The notes below the pieces were generated by a model. The model made no database searches. It saw only the letters and a list, made by a program, of their open reading frames with translations, and was not told the DNA's origin. A stretch of DNA of 64,000 nucleotides, taken from the IMG/VR virus record IMGVR_UViG_3300031787_007614, positions 1 through 64,000 of that record; one strand, written 5' to 3'. Shown here piece by piece: positions 1-9,583 of this stretch; position 1 is the stretch's first letter; each line of letters opens with the position of its first letter. The translations under genes were made by a program, and so were the position numbers.

Positions 1-3
1 TTC

Positions 4-153
4 TATAGTCAAGCACCGAGAGATGCTCAATTTATGCGTCCTCCGCTAAGAGTGCAATAGCCGATAGCAGTTATATTAGGATCCGTTCCCGGCCGGTTGG
101 ACCCGAATAGCGTAAGCGTCCTTACACGATACCTTTATCGGTGCTTGACTATA
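4..153 (-). ncRNA. Unassigned structured RNA (A) closed by a 16-bp stem
   Basis: TATAGTCAAGCACCGA (4-19) is the perfect inverted repeat of 138-153. Internal hairpins (GTAAG/CTTAC, GGGTCC/GGATCC) and G-U pairs mostly favour the minus strand. No ORF; lies in the tRNA operon. Confidence 0.6.
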
Positions 154-183
154 AAAACTAAAAGTTCGGATTTGAAAATCAAA

Positions 184-325
184 TCCTCCCACTGCTAACT
201 ACTGCTTCCCAATTTATCGTCCATCGGCACCCGTGGTAGGGCTTGCGATGCTCATCGGCCCTGAGTTCTGGCTCAGGTGATCCTTGGGATAGGACTGCTG
301 GGCCTTGTCCTGCCCAGCATCAGGA
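184..325 (-). ncRNA. Unassigned structured RNA (B) with H-type pseudoknot
   Basis: Minus strand TGCTGGGC/GCCCAGCA stem whose loop AGGAC can pair with the following GTCCT; further hairpins CCTGAG/CTCAGG and CGATG/CATCG; GC-rich. Confidence 0.55.
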
Positions 326-331
326 AAATTA

Positions 332-530
332 GTTGCTCTGCATCCCCCGGCGGTAATTGTAGTGCATCATCTCTTGGGTTGCCCCGCAATTCTCACACAC
401 CTTCCACCCGCTTCCCGACAGGGACCGCTATCGTGTTGCTAACGGCCTTTCGGTAAGAAGACTACCACCCTTGAGAGTCACCTCACTTCTTATCCTGCGG
501 GTCACAGTATCCGCTAACCAAGCGGAACGT
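332..530 (-). ncRNA. Unassigned structured RNA (C), about 200 nt
   Basis: Minus-strand stems CCGCT/AGCGG, TAAGAAG/CTTCTTA enclosing TGAG/CTCA, and CGGT/ACCG; GC-rich, within the tRNA operon. Confidence 0.5.
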
Positions 531-535
531 CGGGG

Positions 536-595
536 AGAAGCCACGGTTGCAGGACCTAGTGCTCTTGCGAGGAAGTGTCCAGGCGATGTGGCTTC
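536..595 (-). ncRNA. Small bulged hairpin RNA (D)
   Basis: GAAGCCAC/GTGGCTTC outer stem, GCCTGG/CTAGGT middle stem, CTC-GCAA-GAG GNRA tetraloop. Confidence 0.45.
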
Positions 596-600
596 AAACT

Positions 601-693
601 TGAGGCATCATGTGGGATTCGAACCCACGCAAGAAAACCTTGATGATCATTCAAGGTTGAAGCAAACCACACTCCGTTACATCCTATGACGCC
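601..693 (-). ncRNA. Non-canonical tRNA-like RNA 1
   Basis: 8-bp acceptor GGCGTCAT/ATGATGCC, T-arm GTGGG-TTCGAAT-CCCAC, 8-bp hairpin with loop ATGATCA, no clear D-stem, ends TCA. Confidence 0.6.
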
Positions 694-700
694 ATAAACT

Positions 701-791
701 TGGTGGACAACAATGGGAATCTAACCCACTTCTTCCTCGTATGCTATTACGAAGTTTCATACCAGCCTCAGGTAATTGACACATCATGTCC
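701..791 (-). ncRNA. Non-canonical tRNA-like RNA 2
   Basis: GGACA.../...TGTCC acceptor ending ACCA, T-arm GTGGG-TTAGATT-CCCAT, hairpin CTTCGTA/TACGAGG, no canonical D or anticodon arm. Confidence 0.6.
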
Positions 792-798
792 ATAAACT

Positions 799-873
799 TG
801 GCGGTCCCAGGGGGTAACGATCCCCCTCCTCAGCAGTGACAGTGCTGTGTGCGTCCATGAACACCTTGAGACC
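799..873 (-). tRNA. tRNA-Asp(GTC)
   Basis: Full cloverleaf, anticodon loop CT-GTC-AC, G73 and encoded CCA; atypical T-loop ATCGTTA. Confidence 0.9.
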
Positions 874-879
874 AAATTA

Positions 880-1075
880 GGATAAGCTACTGGGTTCCAC
901 GCCAGCCCTTAATTGAGCAGTTACTCTGTCCATCTCATTTATTCAAAGTCTGTGTGCAGTGAGATTCTGCCTATCAGAGTCTGTAAGGGTAGTCTCCATC
1001 CTTACGCTTACGGTCTTCTGCCACCGGATCTCTATCGCTAATCAAACGCTACTTTAACGAAAGTAGTAACGGGAT
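880..1075 (-). ncRNA. Unassigned multi-hairpin RNA (G), about 195 nt
   Basis: Between tRNA-Glu and tRNA-Asp; stems CTACTTT/AAAGTAG, CGGT/ACCG, GTAAGG/CCTTAC, AGACTCTG/CAGAATCT, CTGG/CCAG; no ORF. Confidence 0.55.
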
Positions 1076-1076
1076 T

Positions 1077-1151
1077 TGGTAGAGCGTAGGGGAATCGAAC
1101 CCCTCTTACAGGCGTGAAAGGCTTGTGTCCTAACCGATAGACGAACGCTCC
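1077..1151 (-). tRNA. tRNA-Glu(TTC)
   Basis: Cloverleaf, anticodon loop CT-TTC-AC, T-loop TTCGATT, CCA end. Confidence 0.93.
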
Positions 1152-1157
1152 ATAGTT

Positions 1158-1392
1158 CACTATATGAAAACACATTAGGGAAGTTCTTGACACGCATCAC
1201 CAACTTGCATCAAGACCTCATTACAGGCCCAGTAGTTCCGCCGCCTTCCTGGAGTTTGGTGTAGCCTTATCCCTCACGCTCGATGGTGTCTCGCGCTACT
1301 CTTAGGCCCTCCTGCTTCATGGGTATCCGGCTCGAATCAGCCTTTGTTCACCCCTAACGGACTAGGTAACCCTAATGTGTTTACATATAGTG
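1158..1392 (-). ncRNA. Unassigned structured RNA (H) closed by a 23-bp stem
   Basis: 1158-1180 and 1370-1392 are inverted repeats with one mismatch; GC-rich interior with TCTTGA/TCAAGA and GTAGC/GCTAC stems. Confidence 0.6.
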
Positions 1393-1486
1393 CCCAGAAC
1401 TTAATCTGGGGCACTATACAAAATTAAATTTTTAACGAACTTCAAAGTAGTTTCGATCAACTGCCTTTGTTTTCTAACTAGTCTCT

Positions 1487-1515
1487 AGTATAGCATCTCC
1501 TGCTTTACTGGTCAA
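1487..1515 (-). promoter_or_regulatory. sigma70 promoter, RNA operon (proximal)
   Basis: TTGACC-17-TATACT with extended TG. Confidence 0.75.
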
Positions 1516-1584
1516 CTTGTTTTGTAAATGCCCCGCCTTGTTGCAGGGTCTTTACAAACTTCGCTGTTTTTCTAACTTGTGTCT

Positions 1585-1613
1585 AGTATAGCACCAATCC
1601 AATTATTGGTCTA
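1585..1613 (-). promoter_or_regulatory. sigma70 promoter, RNA operon (distal)
   Basis: TAGACC-17-TATACT with extended TG; downstream sequence duplicated relative to the proximal promoter. Confidence 0.7.
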
Positions 1614-1620
1614 CTGCCAT

Positions 1621-1650
1621 AAAAAAACCCGCCTACTTGGCGGGTTTTTT
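1621..1650. terminator. Rho-independent terminator after porin (bidirectional)
   Basis: A7-CCCGCC-loop-GGCGGG-T6. Confidence 0.85.
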
Positions 1651-1669
1651 GGTTTGTACTACTTCTGTT

Positions 1670-2560
1670 TTAGAACTGTACGACCAACCCGCCTGCTACT
1701 TGTTTGACATCAGTGGCTGCTGAGGTTCCCTCAACTGTACGATACAAAACTTGTGCATAGGTCTTTTTGCTGAAAGCATACTCAGCACCTACGTTGTAAC
1801 TCTTGATGCCATTTTCAATGCGACCATAGCTGGCCTTCACTGTGACTGGTCCACCAAGTTTGTGTGCCACGCCGACCAACTGAGCACGGTTGGTGTTGGC
1901 AGCAACGCCTTTGTTGTCGCTTGCGCTGGCAAACACAGTGGTTGCACCAAATTTAGCACGAGCAGCCAACACGTCACTGGTTTCTGCGCCAGCTTCGTAA
2001 CGAGCATAAGTCAACACAGCAGGTCCAACTGCGGCAATCACGGATGCGGCATAAGGATCAGCGGCAGTGCCAACAGCACCAGTGCTACGATCAAAGTTAG
2101 CAGAGACATTGCCAAAGTTCACAGAAGTGAAAGCGGCATTGCTCAAACGCAAACCACGCAGGTTATGCACGTCGGCAGCTGAGCTACCAATCAATGTGCC
2201 AAATGGATCATTGTCGCTGATGGCCAAGAAGTGAGTGTGAACATTGCGACCAAGATCAACGCTACCCATTTTGTGAGCAATACCCACGGTGCTTTGGCGA
2301 TCGCCAAGTCTAGTGTCAGTACCAGTGTCTGGGCTGTTGGCTTGGATGCCGGTCTCGTATGTGGCACGAGCTGTTAATCCGCCACCTAAGTTTTCAGTAG
2401 CACGAATGCCAAAGTGACTCAAGTCATTGGCCATGCCTTGCACGGTGGAAGCACCAGTTTTGGTGTTGTCAAGGTAAGTGCCAACACGACCATAGATACC
2501 AACTTGTGCGCTTGCAACACCAGCAACTGCCAGGGTCAACGCAATTAGAACTTTCTTCAT
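1670..2560 (-). CDS. Gram-negative general porin (Betaproteobacteria-type)
   Basis: Signal peptide, N-terminal V.IYGRV, S.FGIR..E.LGGGL, Y.FSKKT, C-terminal Phe. Confidence 0.9.
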   Translation of the reverse strand: MKKVLIALTLAVAGVASAQVGIYGRVGTYLDNTKTGASTVQGMANDLSHFGIRATENLGGGLTARATYETGIQANSPDTGTDTRLGDRQSTVGIAHKMGSVDLGRNVHTHFLAISDNDPFGTLIGSSAADVHNLRGLRLSNAAFTSVNFGNVSANFDRSTGAVGTAADPYAASVIAAVGPAVLTYARYEAGAETSDVLAARAKFGATTVFASASDNKGVAANTNRAQLVGVAHKLGGPVTVKASYGRIENGIKSYNVGAEYAFSKKTYAQVLYRTVEGTSAATDVKQVAGGLVVQF

Positions 2561-2608
2561 AAGTAATTTTTCCTTGTTAATGAAATGATCAAATGTCGAT
2601 CATAGAGT

Positions 2609-2638
2609 ATTATATAGCACAAACACTGAGAATGTCAA
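2609..2638 (-). promoter_or_regulatory. sigma70 promoter of porin
   Basis: TTGACA with downstream TATAAT-like box. Confidence 0.6.
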
Positions 2639-2640
2639 AG

Positions 2641-2666
2641 AAAATGGCTACTTTCGCAGCCATTTT
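2641..2666 (-). terminator. Terminator after tmRNA
   Basis: AAAATGGCT-GCGAAAGT-AGCCATTTT. Confidence 0.75.
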
Positions 2667-2826
2667 GGTGGTTTCTGTTACGAGGTATTTCCTACCCTAG
2701 ACGACCTTAAGCGGCCATCAAGAATTTTTCATCATTTGCAGATAAAAGTTTTGCTTGATTTACGGTCATCGCCTACCGTGCTGTCCACTCTGTTACTCTT
2801 TGCCCTGTCGAATCTAGGTCAGGCCC
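2666..2826 (-). ncRNA. ssrA: tmRNA, two-piece: piece with 5' acceptor strand and tag ORF ANDEKFLMAA* (2707-2739)
   Basis: Starts GGGCCTGA-CCTAGATTCGAC; tag reading frame ends in AA-stop. Confidence 0.92.
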
Positions 2827-2839
2827 ATCATAAAGAAAC

Positions 2840-2917
2840 TTAATCTACGCTTAATGTTGTTAACAACAAGCATAATATTGGAAAAACAATTAATAAAAAT
2901 TTTGCTAAATTTTCCAT
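2840..2917 (-). CDS. 25-aa hydrophobic micropeptide in tmRNA intervening segment
   Basis: MENLAKFLLIVFPILCLLLTTLSVD*; start is 1 nt after the upstream micro-ORF stop. Confidence 0.45.
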   Translation of the reverse strand: MENLAKFLLIVFPILCLLLTTLSVD

Positions 2918-2918
2918 A

Positions 2919-3029
2919 TTACCATAACTCACAGTTTTTTATTTTCTCTTCGTCCAATGTGGTATCACGTGTAAAATAAAATACACCAAACACTAACCAA
3001 AATAACAAAAATAAAACATAACCTATCAT
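2919..3029 (-). CDS. 36-aa single-TM micropeptide in tmRNA intervening segment
   Basis: MIGYVLFLLFWLVFGVFYFTRDTTLDEEKIKNCELW*; RBS AAGGAAG just upstream. Confidence 0.55.
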   Translation of the reverse strand: MIGYVLFLLFWLVFGVFYFTRDTTLDEEKIKNCELW

Positions 3030-3041
3030 TAAACTTCCTTA

Positions 3042-3108
3042 TGGTGGACCTGGGGGGATTCGCACCCCCGTCCAGAACACTTTTCTCTCGGCTTCATACA
3101 GCAATAAC
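3042..3108 (-). ncRNA. ssrA: tmRNA, two-piece: piece with T-arm and ACCA end (transcribed first)
   Basis: GGAC-GGGGG-TGCGAAT-CCCCC-CAGGTCC-ACCA; pairs with GGGCCTG giving the G3-U70 Ala identity. Confidence 0.92.
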
Positions 3109-3112
3109 TCGC

Positions 3113-3141
3113 AGTATATATTTATTCTTTGGGCTTGTCAA
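3113..3141 (-). promoter_or_regulatory. sigma70 promoter of tmRNA
   Basis: TTGACA-17-TATACT. Confidence 0.8.
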
Positions 3142-3283
3142 CTGCTTTGGAGATGATGTCATACACTTGTGCGTATGCATCAGTAATTTTGTCTAGTTGT
3201 TGTTCCGACACCAAGTCTGTGTCCTCCAGACTGACCAAGTCTCGGGCTAGATTTTCTTGTAGTTTTTTTATGGGATTGAGCAC
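3122..3283 (-). CDS. Hypothetical protein, 53 aa (GTG start)
   Basis: Manual translation VLNPIKKLQENLARDL...; ATAAATA motif upstream. Confidence 0.5.
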   Translation of the reverse strand: MLNPIKKLQENLARDLVSLEDTDLVSEQQLDKITDAYAQVYDIISKAVDKPKE

Positions 3284-3291
3284 ATACCTAT

Positions 3292-3825
3292 TTATTCATC
3301 CCCGCTATCTACTGGGATCCAGCCCAACTTAAAAAAGTCTTCCTGGATTTCTTCTGTGACATGTCCTTCGGGTACATATCTTTTAACACCGTCAGCATCA
3401 CCATTGCCCAGTCCATCGCCTATGCCCGAACAGTACCAATCAATATAGTCACCTTGTTCACGCATGTCGGCAACAATACCCCCGGCATAGCGCCACGAAC
3501 AACTGTAGGTCTCTCCCTTTAGCAAAGGCCATACTTCGTTGCGTTGCCAGTCTTGATTGCACAAGGCTGCGTAGATGTTTTGAGCGTAGGTATCGCTGGC
3601 CTTGGCTTTGTCGCAAACCCACTTGGTGCTACGCAAATCATATTCAAGATTGTTTTCTCGCCACCGTTCGTCGGCTTCGCGTTGAGCCTGATGTTCGTTG
3701 ATCATGCGTTCAAGATCTAAAGCTCGTTGAACATCTTCGTCAGTGGCAGGATCTCCTCCTTCCGCAATGACATCTTCAATTCTGCATTGACTGTGAAAGG
3801 TTCCGCGAGTAGGACTTTTGTTCAT
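3292..3825 (-). CDS. Hypothetical phage protein
   Basis: Start moved to MNKSP to avoid overlap with tRNA-Leu. Confidence 0.75.
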   Translation of the reverse strand: MNKSPTRGTFHSQCRIEDVIAEGGDPATDEDVQRALDLERMINEHQAQREADERWRENNLEYDLRSTKWVCDKAKASDTYAQNIYAALCNQDWQRNEVWPLLKGETYSCSWRYAGGIVADMREQGDYIDWYCSGIGDGLGNGDADGVKRYVPEGHVTEEIQEDFFKLGWIPVDSGDE

Positions 3826-3831
3826 AATGTT

Positions 3832-3917
3832 TGGTACCAGAGACGGGACTCGAACCCGTATGCCCTTGCAAGCGGCAGATTTTAAGTCTGCTGTGTATAC
3901 CATTCCACCACTCTGGC
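3832..3917 (-). tRNA. tRNA-Leu(TAA)
   Basis: Long variable arm, anticodon loop CT-TAA-AA, ACCA. Confidence 0.95.
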
Positions 3918-3935
3918 TTTGCGTTATTTAATACA

Positions 3936-4010
3936 TGGTCCGGCGTAGAGGAATCGAACCTCTATAATGACTTTAGAAGAATCATGTCCTATCCGTTGAA
4001 CGAACGCCAG
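3936..4010 (-). tRNA. tRNA-Arg(TCT)
   Basis: Cloverleaf, anticodon loop CT-TCT-AA, CCA. Confidence 0.93.
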
Positions 4011-4015
4011 ATGTT

Positions 4016-4090
4016 TGGTGGGCCAACTTGGAATTGAACCAAGACTCGACCGATTATGAGTCGGTTGCTTTACCATTAAGCTATTGGCCC
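4016..4090 (-). tRNA. tRNA-CAT (probably Ile2, otherwise elongator Met)
   Basis: Cloverleaf, loop CT-CAT-AA; G1-C72 paired so not initiator. Confidence 0.9.
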
Positions 4091-9382: not shown

Positions 9383-9583
9383 TTAATAAGATTGATGTGA
9401 ATGTCCGATACGATACACGGGTGCGCCTGGCGTCAAATCATTTTCCGGAGTATACACTTCCGGCAACATGATATCCGCAAACTCACCGTAGGAGTAATAA
9501 CCAGACTCGGTCACTACCAAGCGAGCATCAGCGGGCAGGGCACGGAGTGCCTCAATCATTTGTGCTACAGTTATAGTGGTCAT
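9383..9583 (-). CDS. Hypothetical early protein
   Basis: Start MTTITV after AAGGAG and an early promoter. Confidence 0.7.
   Translation of the reverse strand: MTTITVAQMIEALRALPADARLVVTESGYYSYGEFADIMLPEVYTPENDLTPGAPVYRIGHSHQSY

What the first reader, a model, noticed from the sequence alone, without database searches (positions are those of the whole stretch)
184..325. RNA B: 5' H-type pseudoknot followed by a hairpin series
Seen: 8-bp stem TGCTGGGC/GCCCAGCA, loop AGGAC complementary to the directly adjacent GTCCT, plus three further stems. Inference: compact tertiary fold typical of a ribozyme or aptamer.
Basis: partly seen in the sequence, partly recalled or inferred. Interest (0 to 1): 0.6.

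Follow-up and report, generated by a model that had tools for sequence, protein, structure and literature searches.

The report
New pseudoknotted phage RNA in tRNA island
The finding is a real gene for a compact, roughly 160-nucleotide RNA with three pseudoknots. It belongs to a previously uncatalogued family found only in phages, usually among their tRNA genes, and its function is unknown.

Summary
They belong to a conserved RNA family. 98 distinct homologues from viral and metagenome contigs, plus Bordetella phage PHB04, keep 45 modelled pairs in 99.3% of cells, and 25 pairs show compensatory changes. Covariation instead supports three other tertiary pairings: 5' CCU with loop-1 AGG, loop-4 CCAC with a 3' GUGG, and (both sides invariant) loop-2 UCCCA with a 3' UGGGA.

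The window is from a circularly assembled 364-kb T4-like jumbo phage. The RNA lies in its 12.7-kb island of 30 tRNAs and a tmRNA, as the last gene of a tRNA/RNA operon. In other phages it sits flush between tRNAs, or directly after a small ORF.

No Rfam 15 family matches. It was not found in representative bacterial genomes. It occurs in unrelated phages that share no protein, and it appears in metatranscriptome assemblies.

Best reading: a trans-acting stable RNA released with the tRNAs and aimed at a host component. Its function is unproven, and a ribozyme or aptamer role cannot be excluded.

The parts
161..330 (-).
   Evidence: The covariance model R1 matches at 183 bits, E 3e-50. Relatives lacking the module join 158|334 or 163|334.
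322..324 (-). PK1 5' strand CCU, which pairs with AGG at 309-311 in loop 1
   Evidence: 100% paired in 98 sequences. Two of three pairs covary, CG to UA in 3 and in 5 sequences from different lineages (sequences).
296..319 (-). P1 hairpin: 8-bp stem (312-319 with 296-303) and loop 1 AGGACAAG (304-311)
   Evidence: 6 of 8 pairs have compensatory changes. One homologue (L222) carries an extra hairpin inserted in the loop.
280..295 (-). P2 hairpin GUCCU/AGGAU with loop 2 AUCCCA (285-290)
   Evidence: The stem is invariant in all 98 sequences; only the first loop base varies, A or U.
260..277 (-). P3 hairpin: 6-bp stem with a 6-nt loop ending in GAA
   Evidence: 5 of 6 pairs covary, with up to 5 pair types per position.
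251..259 (-). J3/4, the near-invariant single strand GCCGAUGAG
   Evidence: Alignments A2-A5. It does not covary with the P4 5' strand.
222..250 (-). P4: outer stem 246-250/222-226, inner stem 239-242/229-232, loop 4 UACCAC (233-238)
   Evidence: 7 of 9 pairs covary.
207..211 (-). PK2 3' strand UGGGA, complementary to loop 2 UCCCA (285-289)
   Evidence: Perfect 5-bp complementarity, with both sides invariant in 98 sequences. This pairing is inferred, not shown by covariation.
194..202 (-). P5, a possible 2-bp mini-hairpin with an NGNNA loop
   Evidence: Weak support: 3 compensatory changes but 13 mismatches at its G-C pair.
189..192 (-). PK3 3' strand GUGG, which pairs with loop 4 CCAC (233-236)
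   Evidence: 100% paired. PHB04 has GCAC:GUGC and L245 has CUAC:GUAG, two independent compensatory changes.
161..186 (-). P6 variable terminal hairpin (168-186; here 8 bp and AU-rich) followed by a U-rich tail, terminator-like
   Evidence: The stem covaries while its length and loop vary. U-runs follow it in many homologues. The consensus terminator scan did not call it.
148..176 (-). Promoter-like site (TTCAAA, 17 nt, TATAGT) overlapping the end of the RNA and facing the next RNA module
   Evidence: 9 of 12 matches, weak. Clear sigma-70-type promoters follow the RNA in other loci such as L055.
1487..1515 (-). Promoter-like site that could drive the operon: tRNA-Glu, module, tRNA-Asp, modules, then this RNA
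   Evidence: 10 of 12 matches, with an extended -10 TG. tRNAs are.

Best explanation
Window 330-161 (minus strand) encodes a small stable non-coding RNA of about 155-165 nt from a new, phage-restricted family. It folds on its own into a compact body of five covarying helices (P1, P3, P4a, P4b, P6) and the invariant P2 hairpin, locked by three pseudoknots: 5' CCU with loop 1, loop 2 with a 3' UGGGA, and loop 4 with a 3' GUGG. Those points are shown or strongly supported. The following are inferred. It is transcribed together with phage tRNAs; here it is the last gene of a tRNA/RNA operon and ends in a terminator-like hairpin. It is set free by the host enzymes that excise the flanking tRNAs. 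It then acts in trans on a conserved host component, as a protein-binding decoy or sponge linked to translation, RNA processing or tRNA-directed defence, rather than on a phage protein or a neighbouring gene.
For: Fold: 45 modelled pairs are 99.3% paired in 98 distinct sequences, and 25 pairs have compensatory changes. No shuffle out of 500 reaches this, and sliding the partners collapses pairing to 24-45%.

tRNA setting: in about a dozen loci it lies on the same strand as tRNAs. The upstream tRNA ends 1-4 nt before the model start in 4 loci, and the downstream tRNA starts 1-4 nt after the model end in 8. In the window it sits in a 12.7-kb island of 30 tRNAs and a tmRNA, downstream of a promoter-like site and ending in a hairpin plus U-run.

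No phage protein partner: PHB04 (65% GC) shares no protein at blastp 1e-6 with the three T4-like carriers, yet its RNA is about 80% identical.

Not host-derived: a gapped pattern scan of 185,579 species genomes gave only chance hits, and 151 sampled genomes of one bacterial phylum had no model match.

Present in RNA libraries: metatranscriptome contigs cover 185-297 and 186-322, one at depth 74.

Nearly every conserved base is paired or in a short junction, so there is no long free strand for antisense action.
Against: No experiment or read-end data show the mature ends, stability or any partner. The RNA-library evidence is contigs, which cannot prove transcription. In about half of the IMG/VR loci no tRNA lies within the fetched locus, and the RNA follows a small ORF instead. 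The trans-acting decoy role is inference by exclusion. A small or fast-evolving phage partner protein could escape blastp.
Confidence: 0.5

Rival explanations
1. It is a self-cleaving or otherwise catalytic RNA. It would cut at or near its own 5' edge, trimming the trailer of the upstream tRNA or ending the upstream mRNA.
For: It has a multi-pseudoknot compact fold with near-invariant junction bases (GA after PK1, GCCGAUGAG, GACG). It starts 5-8 nt after a tRNA CCA end or a stop codon.
Against: No Rfam ribozyme family matches, even at E up to 10. The topology does not fit hammerhead or HDV-like folds (own comparison from memory of those folds). A metatranscriptome contig runs uninterrupted from the upstream tRNA end into the RNA, though that could be precursor or DNA.
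Confidence: 0.13
2. It is a cis-acting transcript-end element: a terminator combined with an exonuclease-resistant cap that stabilises the upstream tRNA or mRNA transcript.
For: The terminal hairpin is followed by U-runs, and new promoters follow in many loci. In the window it is last in its operon.
Against: In arrays it lies between tRNAs that are excised anyway. A terminator does not need 120 nt of near-invariant, triple-knotted sequence upstream.
Confidence: 0.12
3. It is a free-standing aptamer that binds or sequesters a small molecule, for example a nucleotide signal.
For: Its size, compactness and density of conserved junction bases are in the range of riboswitch aptamers.
Against: There is no expression platform and no consistent downstream gene. 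No riboswitch family matches.
Confidence: 0.08
4. It assembles into an RNA-only homo-oligomer, with the loop-to-3'-strand pairings formed between molecules, as in the tRNA-island-associated ROOL and GOLLD RNAs.
For: It shares their setting: phage, tRNA island, multiple pseudoknots, no known protein partner (PMC12286853, read). Covariation cannot tell intramolecular from intermolecular pairing for PK2 and PK3.
Against: It is 4-5 times smaller than ROOL or GOLLD, with no sequence or model similarity. The intramolecular fold is sterically plausible.
Confidence: 0.07
5. The conservation reflects DNA, not RNA: a target site or cargo of homing endonucleases that moves as a cassette.
For: HNH (HNH_3 + NUMOD4) and GIY-YIG endonuclease genes lie next to it in some loci. 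Relatives show clean presence/absence at 158|334.
Against: Compensatory changes at 25 base pairs show selection on RNA pairing. Cassette mobility may explain its spread but not its conservation.
Confidence: 0.03

Closest known systems
GOLLD and ROOL RNAs (phage and prophage RNAs near tRNA islands)
   Same: They are encoded by phages, often next to or within tRNA islands. They have multi-pseudoknot folds, no known protein partner and unknown function (PMC12286853).
   Different: Those RNAs are about 580-800+ nt and form nanocages; this RNA is about 160 nt. No Rfam GOLLD or ROOL match was found in the window or the locus. Oligomerisation was not tested.
Phage T4 rnaC/rnaD ('species 1 and 2' small stable RNAs)
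   Same: They are non-tRNA stable RNAs of about 120-140 nt at the end of a phage tRNA cluster, on the same strand. A homing endonuclease gene lies in the T4 cluster, and their function is unknown.
   Different: There is no homology. The covariance model scores at most 7 bits anywhere in the T4 tRNA region, and nothing on rnaC or rnaD, with filters off. The rnaC sequence contains a tRNA-like T-arm string (own reading); this RNA has none.
Classical H-type pseudoknots (viral recoding or tRNA-like pseudoknots)
   Same: PK1 plus P1 has H-type topology: a 3-bp stem, a 2-nt linker, an 8-bp stem, no second linker, and a 5-nt A-rich third loop. Stacked, they would give about 11 bp.
   Different: It is not placed to recode. 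In the ORF-adjacent loci the next in-frame stop is 4 codons beyond the stop codon and there is no slippery site (own reading of L015). It is only the first part of a larger fold.
Box C/D-like or kink-turn motifs
   Same: The only weak Rfam hit aligns GCCGAUGAG to a C box. A CUGA lies at the 5' end.
   Different: 16 bits against a gathering score of 40. No terminal stem and no guide regions. The strand order and the flanking base next to P3 do not fit a standard kink-turn (own inspection).

Membership tests
Any Rfam 15 family (4227 models, including riboswitches, ribozymes, tRNA, tmRNA, SRP, 6S, RNase P, GOLLD, ROOL, HEARO) | A covariance-model score at or above the family's gathering threshold | tested here: not met
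   No match over 150-345 at gathering scores. At E up to 10 the only hit is sR34, 16.1 bits against 40. The PHB04 copy also has no match.
tRNA / tmRNA | A cloverleaf or tRNA-like domain detected by ARAGORN or Rfam | tested here: not met
   ARAGORN and Rfam find tRNAs and the two-piece tmRNA nearby but nothing at 161-330.
T4 rnaC/rnaD | Sequence and structure homology to the T4 RNAs | tested here: not met
   Model R1 with filters off on the T4 tRNA region gives a best score of 7.2 bits, and that hit lies in an unrelated ORF region.
   81.5% of cells paired. One pair is unpaired in 32 of 37 sequences, another breaks when the loop changes, and there are no compensatory changes.
H-type pseudoknot, revised (5' CCU with loop-1 AGG) | Crossing pairs kept, with compensatory change | tested here: met
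   100% paired in 98 sequences; CG to UA at two different pairs in separate lineages.
Self-cleaving ribozyme | Site-specific self-scission | not testable with these tools
   Only contigs were available, with no read ends. No known ribozyme model matches.
Riboswitch | An aptamer joined to an expression platform upstream of a regulated gene | tested here: not met
   It is flanked by tRNAs on both sides in arrays. Elsewhere it follows an ORF and is itself followed by a promoter or by varying genes.
ROOL/GOLLD-type RNA-only assemblies | Homo-oligomeric assembly | not testable with these tools
   Only the shared genomic setting could be established.

The most novel reading that the evidence does not exclude
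It is a new functional class: either a new ribozyme, or an RNA decoy or sponge by which lytic phages neutralise a conserved host factor (for example a tRNA- or translation-directed defence nuclease), spread between unrelated phages as a mobile RNA cassette. It may be one of several such uncharacterised RNA cassettes in these tRNA islands.
Probability: 0.3. Interest if true: 0.85.

Novelty: new variant of a known kind. Interest (0 to 1): 0.62.

Why it matters
Complex, highly conserved RNA folds with no assigned function are rare, and they have repeatedly turned out to be ribozymes, ligand sensors or machines. This one is short enough for direct structural and biochemical work. It is abundant in freshwater, estuarine and marine phages. 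It is also present in a cultured phage, Bordetella phage PHB04, so genetics is possible.

It suggests that phage tRNA islands carry more than tRNAs. The same island holds several other conserved, unannotated RNA modules that come and go as cassettes. That bears on the open question of what tRNA-island-associated phage RNAs such as GOLLD, ROOL and T4 rnaC/rnaD are for.

Tried and rejected
- **Rfam.** Searched at gathering and at permissive thresholds on the window, the 196-nt region and the PHB04 locus; nothing relevant.
- **T4 rnaC/rnaD homology.** Rejected.
- **Host origin.** A gapped pattern scan of GTDB representative genomes gave 24 loci, all chance by the model. Three genomes and then 151 sampled genomes of one phylum gave no match. 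This means 'not found in those searched', not 'absent'.
- **A looser pattern through P4.** It returned only unrelated GC-rich coding sequences.
- **A partner protein.** The about 70-aa ORF that ends just before the RNA in 23 loci has a homologue in the window genome 9 kb away. It is absent from PHB04 and from two complete carrier genomes, so it is not a universal partner and has no Pfam or PHROG match. No protein family is shared by all four carrier genomes.
- **Coding potential.** A 15-codon AUG frame exists in the window copy, but the AUG is lost in some homologues, and the substitution pattern is that of paired stems (own reading).
- **Recoding signal for the upstream ORF.** Rejected (see Closest known systems).
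- **CsrA-type GGA sponge, SRP, 5S, RNase P and 23S GTPase-centre mimicry.** Considered from memory of their motifs. Similarities are short and not conserved in PHB04; none is supported.
- **Homology of window 331-700 with the PHB04 upstream region.** Not supported.
- **Literature.** Four full-text searches ran; a fifth was rejected for a too-short term. They found no description of this RNA. The large IMG/VR screen of candidate structured RNAs (PMC10690425) may contain it, but its tables are not held.

Full report
**Observation.** Reading from 330 down to 161, the RNA begins with CCUGA, followed by an 8-bp hairpin (319-312 with 303-296) whose loop is AGGACAAG. Next come GUCCU (295-291) and more hairpins. 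Folding the single sequence gives -54.3 kcal/mol and z = -2.0 on the minus strand, against z = -0.75 on the plus strand. That is suggestive but not compelling by itself.

**A conserved family.** A distant BLAST against cultured phages found one relative, Bordetella phage vB_BbrM_PHB04, at 80.6% identity over 95 nt in an unannotated gap. The pairwise alignment already showed three compensatory changes in the 8-bp stem. Two conserved words were then used to scan IMG/VR. They retrieved dozens of loci in which both words lie about 75 nt apart. A covariance model built from 20 of these recognised 48 loci in IMG/VR, plus two more found with a gapped pattern. In all, 98 distinct sequences were aligned to the model. 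There is only one copy in the window and in its genome.

**Secondary and tertiary structure.** On the 98-sequence alignment, my 45-pair model is paired in 99.3% of cells. Twenty-five pairs carry compensatory changes. No shuffle out of 500 reaches any measure, and sliding the partners by 1-3 columns drops pairing to 24-45% (the same on 37 sequences).
- P1 (6 of 8 pairs), P3 (5 of 6), P4 outer (4 of 5), P4 inner (3 of 4) and P6 (2 of 3) all covary.
- P2 (GUCCU/AGGAU) never varies.
The fourth pair is unpaired in 32 of 37 sequences. The second pair breaks in the 2 of those 37 sequences whose loop position changes. No compensatory change occurs.
- PK1: the loop's AGG pairs with the 5' flank CCU. 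One lineage has CUU with AAG, and another has UCU with AGA. There are no mismatches in 98 sequences.
- PK3: loop 4 CCAC pairs with GUGG near the 3' end. PHB04 has GCAC with GUGC, and L245 has CUAC with GUAG.
- PK2: loop 2 UCCCA is perfectly complementary to UGGGA. Both sides are invariant even where the search pattern left loop 2 free. This pairing is therefore an inference.
- P5 is weak, with 13 mismatches.
- One homologue has an extra hairpin inserted in loop 1, between the AGG and the AAG. This fits a loop whose two ends matter while its middle does not.
- Window coordinates of every element are listed under 'parts'.

**Genomic setting in the window.** The window is the first 64 kb of a 364,404-bp virus record. 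Its 'terminal repeat' is an exact 127-nt overlap, so the assembly is circular and position 1 is arbitrary. The phage is T4-like: it has a family-B DNA polymerase of phrog_262 and shares 39 protein families with two phages of 150-164 kb. Window 1-4090 together with the genome's last 8.6 kb forms one island of about 12.7 kb. All of it is on the minus strand, and it holds 30 tRNAs and a two-piece tmRNA. No ORF of note lies in 1-1670. A promoter-like site at 1515-1487 precedes tRNA-Glu, an RNA module, tRNA-Asp, further modules and finally this RNA. Here its P6 is an 8-bp AU-rich hairpin followed by a U-rich tail. A weak promoter-like site overlaps the end of the RNA.

**Setting elsewhere.** In about a dozen loci the RNA lies between tRNAs on the same strand. 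The upstream tRNA ends 1-4 nt before the model start in 4 loci. That is 4-6 nt between the encoded CCA and the CCUGA. The downstream tRNA starts 1-4 nt after the model end in 8 loci. In a second group of loci, 23 in all, it starts 2 nt after the stop codon of a conserved ORF of about 70 aa with no known domain. There it is followed by a small GNRA hairpin, a sigma-70-type promoter, or in three loci an inserted HNH homing endonuclease gene. GIY-YIG endonuclease genes lie upstream.

Metatranscriptome contigs laid on the window show relatives in which exactly this module is missing (joints 158|334 and 163|334). Other modules of the island are likewise missing in some relatives (593|798, 873|1076, 1177|1374). 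The island is therefore a mosaic of RNA cassettes.

**Distribution.** All carriers are viral or metagenomic contigs, mainly from lakes and other fresh water, with some marine and estuarine. A gapped pattern scan of one genome for each of 185,579 prokaryote species gave only chance matches. A model search of 151 sampled genomes of one bacterial phylum gave none. PHB04 (94 kb, 65% GC) shares no protein with the three T4-like carriers at blastp 1e-6, yet its RNA is about 80% identical. It also carries a two-piece tmRNA and tRNAs in the same unannotated gap. The RNA has therefore moved between unrelated phages, and it cannot depend on a conserved phage protein detectable by sequence.

Metatranscriptome assemblies from four studies hold parts of the island. 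Contigs cover 185-297 (5 differences) and 186-322 (depth 74). The second runs on into an upstream tRNA 3' end. Contigs cannot prove transcription or show ends.

**Comparison with known RNAs.** No Rfam 15 family matches at any threshold tried. T4's rnaC and rnaD occupy an analogous place but are not homologous. GOLLD and ROOL are the closest known kind: phage RNAs near tRNA islands, with many pseudoknots, no known partner and unknown function (PMC12286853). They are far larger and unrelated by model. Hammerhead, HDV-like, box C/D and recoding pseudoknots were considered and do not fit (see membership tests). I found no paper describing this RNA.

**How it most likely works.** Two things are shown: an independently folding, strongly constrained RNA, and its residence in phage tRNA operons. 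The rest is inferred.
- Because it is flush with tRNAs, RNase P cleavage at the downstream tRNA and 3' processing of the upstream tRNA would release it as a discrete molecule.
- Because almost all conserved bases are engaged in helices, pseudoknots or short junctions, it is unlikely to act by antisense pairing.
- Because no phage protein is shared among carriers, and the sequence is held at about 80% across unrelated phages, its target is most likely a conserved host component.
- Alternatively, the RNA itself may be the active agent, as a ribozyme, an aptamer or an RNA-only assembly.

I give the trans-acting host-directed stable RNA reading 0.5. The ribozyme, cis-acting 3'-end, aptamer and oligomer readings share most of the remainder.

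**Novelty.** This is a new RNA family of a known general kind: orphan structured RNAs of phage tRNA islands. It is of above-average interest because the fold is complex, the family is abundant, and a cultured carrier exists.

Noticed in passing
window 1-158 (minus strand; also genome end 364278-364404): 'RNA A': a module of about 155 nt closed by a 16-17-bp stem (4-20 with 138-155), directly downstream of the RNA studied. Its core (60-138) is 80-82% conserved in L030, L320 and L010, and it follows the RNA in several relatives. No Rfam match.
   Followed up: partly
window 874-1075 (minus strand): A module of about 200 nt between tRNA-Asp and tRNA-Glu, 78-88% conserved in seven loci, with a variable-length covarying hairpin and long invariant stretches. 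No Rfam match. It is missing in some relatives (joint 873|1076).
   Followed up: partly
window 334-598 (minus strand): The non-coding stretch just upstream of the RNA has the highest summed contig depth in two metatranscriptomes (about 260) and is weakly similar to L067. It is probably another stable RNA. No clear homology to the PHB04 upstream region.
   Followed up: partly
window 604-692 (minus strand): A tRNA-like piece with a good T-arm (GGGUUCGAAUCCCAC) but no proper acceptor stem. Rfam tRNA scores 20 bits, below threshold, and ARAGORN does not call it. It is conserved in L047.
   Followed up: no
window 2616-3155 (minus strand): A two-piece (permuted) tmRNA of the betaproteobacterial type, with tag peptide ANDEKFLMAA. 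This hints at a betaproteobacterial host. PHB04 has one too (L001 3872-4209), unannotated in its record.
   Followed up: partly
whole record G000: The record's 'direct terminal repeat' is an exact 127-nt overlap, typical of a circular assembly, so it is not evidence of real terminal repeats. The tRNA island (30 tRNAs) spans the arbitrary start point.
   Followed up: yes
L003 3993-4220 and 22 other loci; window 9386-9574 (minus strand): A conserved protein of about 70 aa (C-terminus GHSHQSY) with no Pfam or PHROG match. It ends 2 nt before the RNA model in 23 loci. A 63%-identical homologue lies in the window, 9 kb from the RNA. It is absent from PHB04 and from two complete carrier genomes.
   Followed up: partly
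L003 4413-4871, L004, L024; L003 1810-2223 and 3194-3547: Free-standing homing endonuclease genes (HNH_3 + NUMOD4; SegE-like GIY-YIG) are inserted next to the RNA gene in some but not all syntenic loci. This recalls segB in the T4 tRNA cluster.
   Followed up: partly
L222 149-329: One homologue carries a 21-nt extra hairpin inserted inside loop 1, between the AGG and the AAG.
   Followed up: no
window 1178-1373 and 1425-1673 (minus strand): Further non-coding stretches are conserved at 75-97% in several related loci and are missing in some relatives (joint 1177|1374). A strong bidirectional terminator-like hairpin lies at 1622-1650.
   Followed up: no
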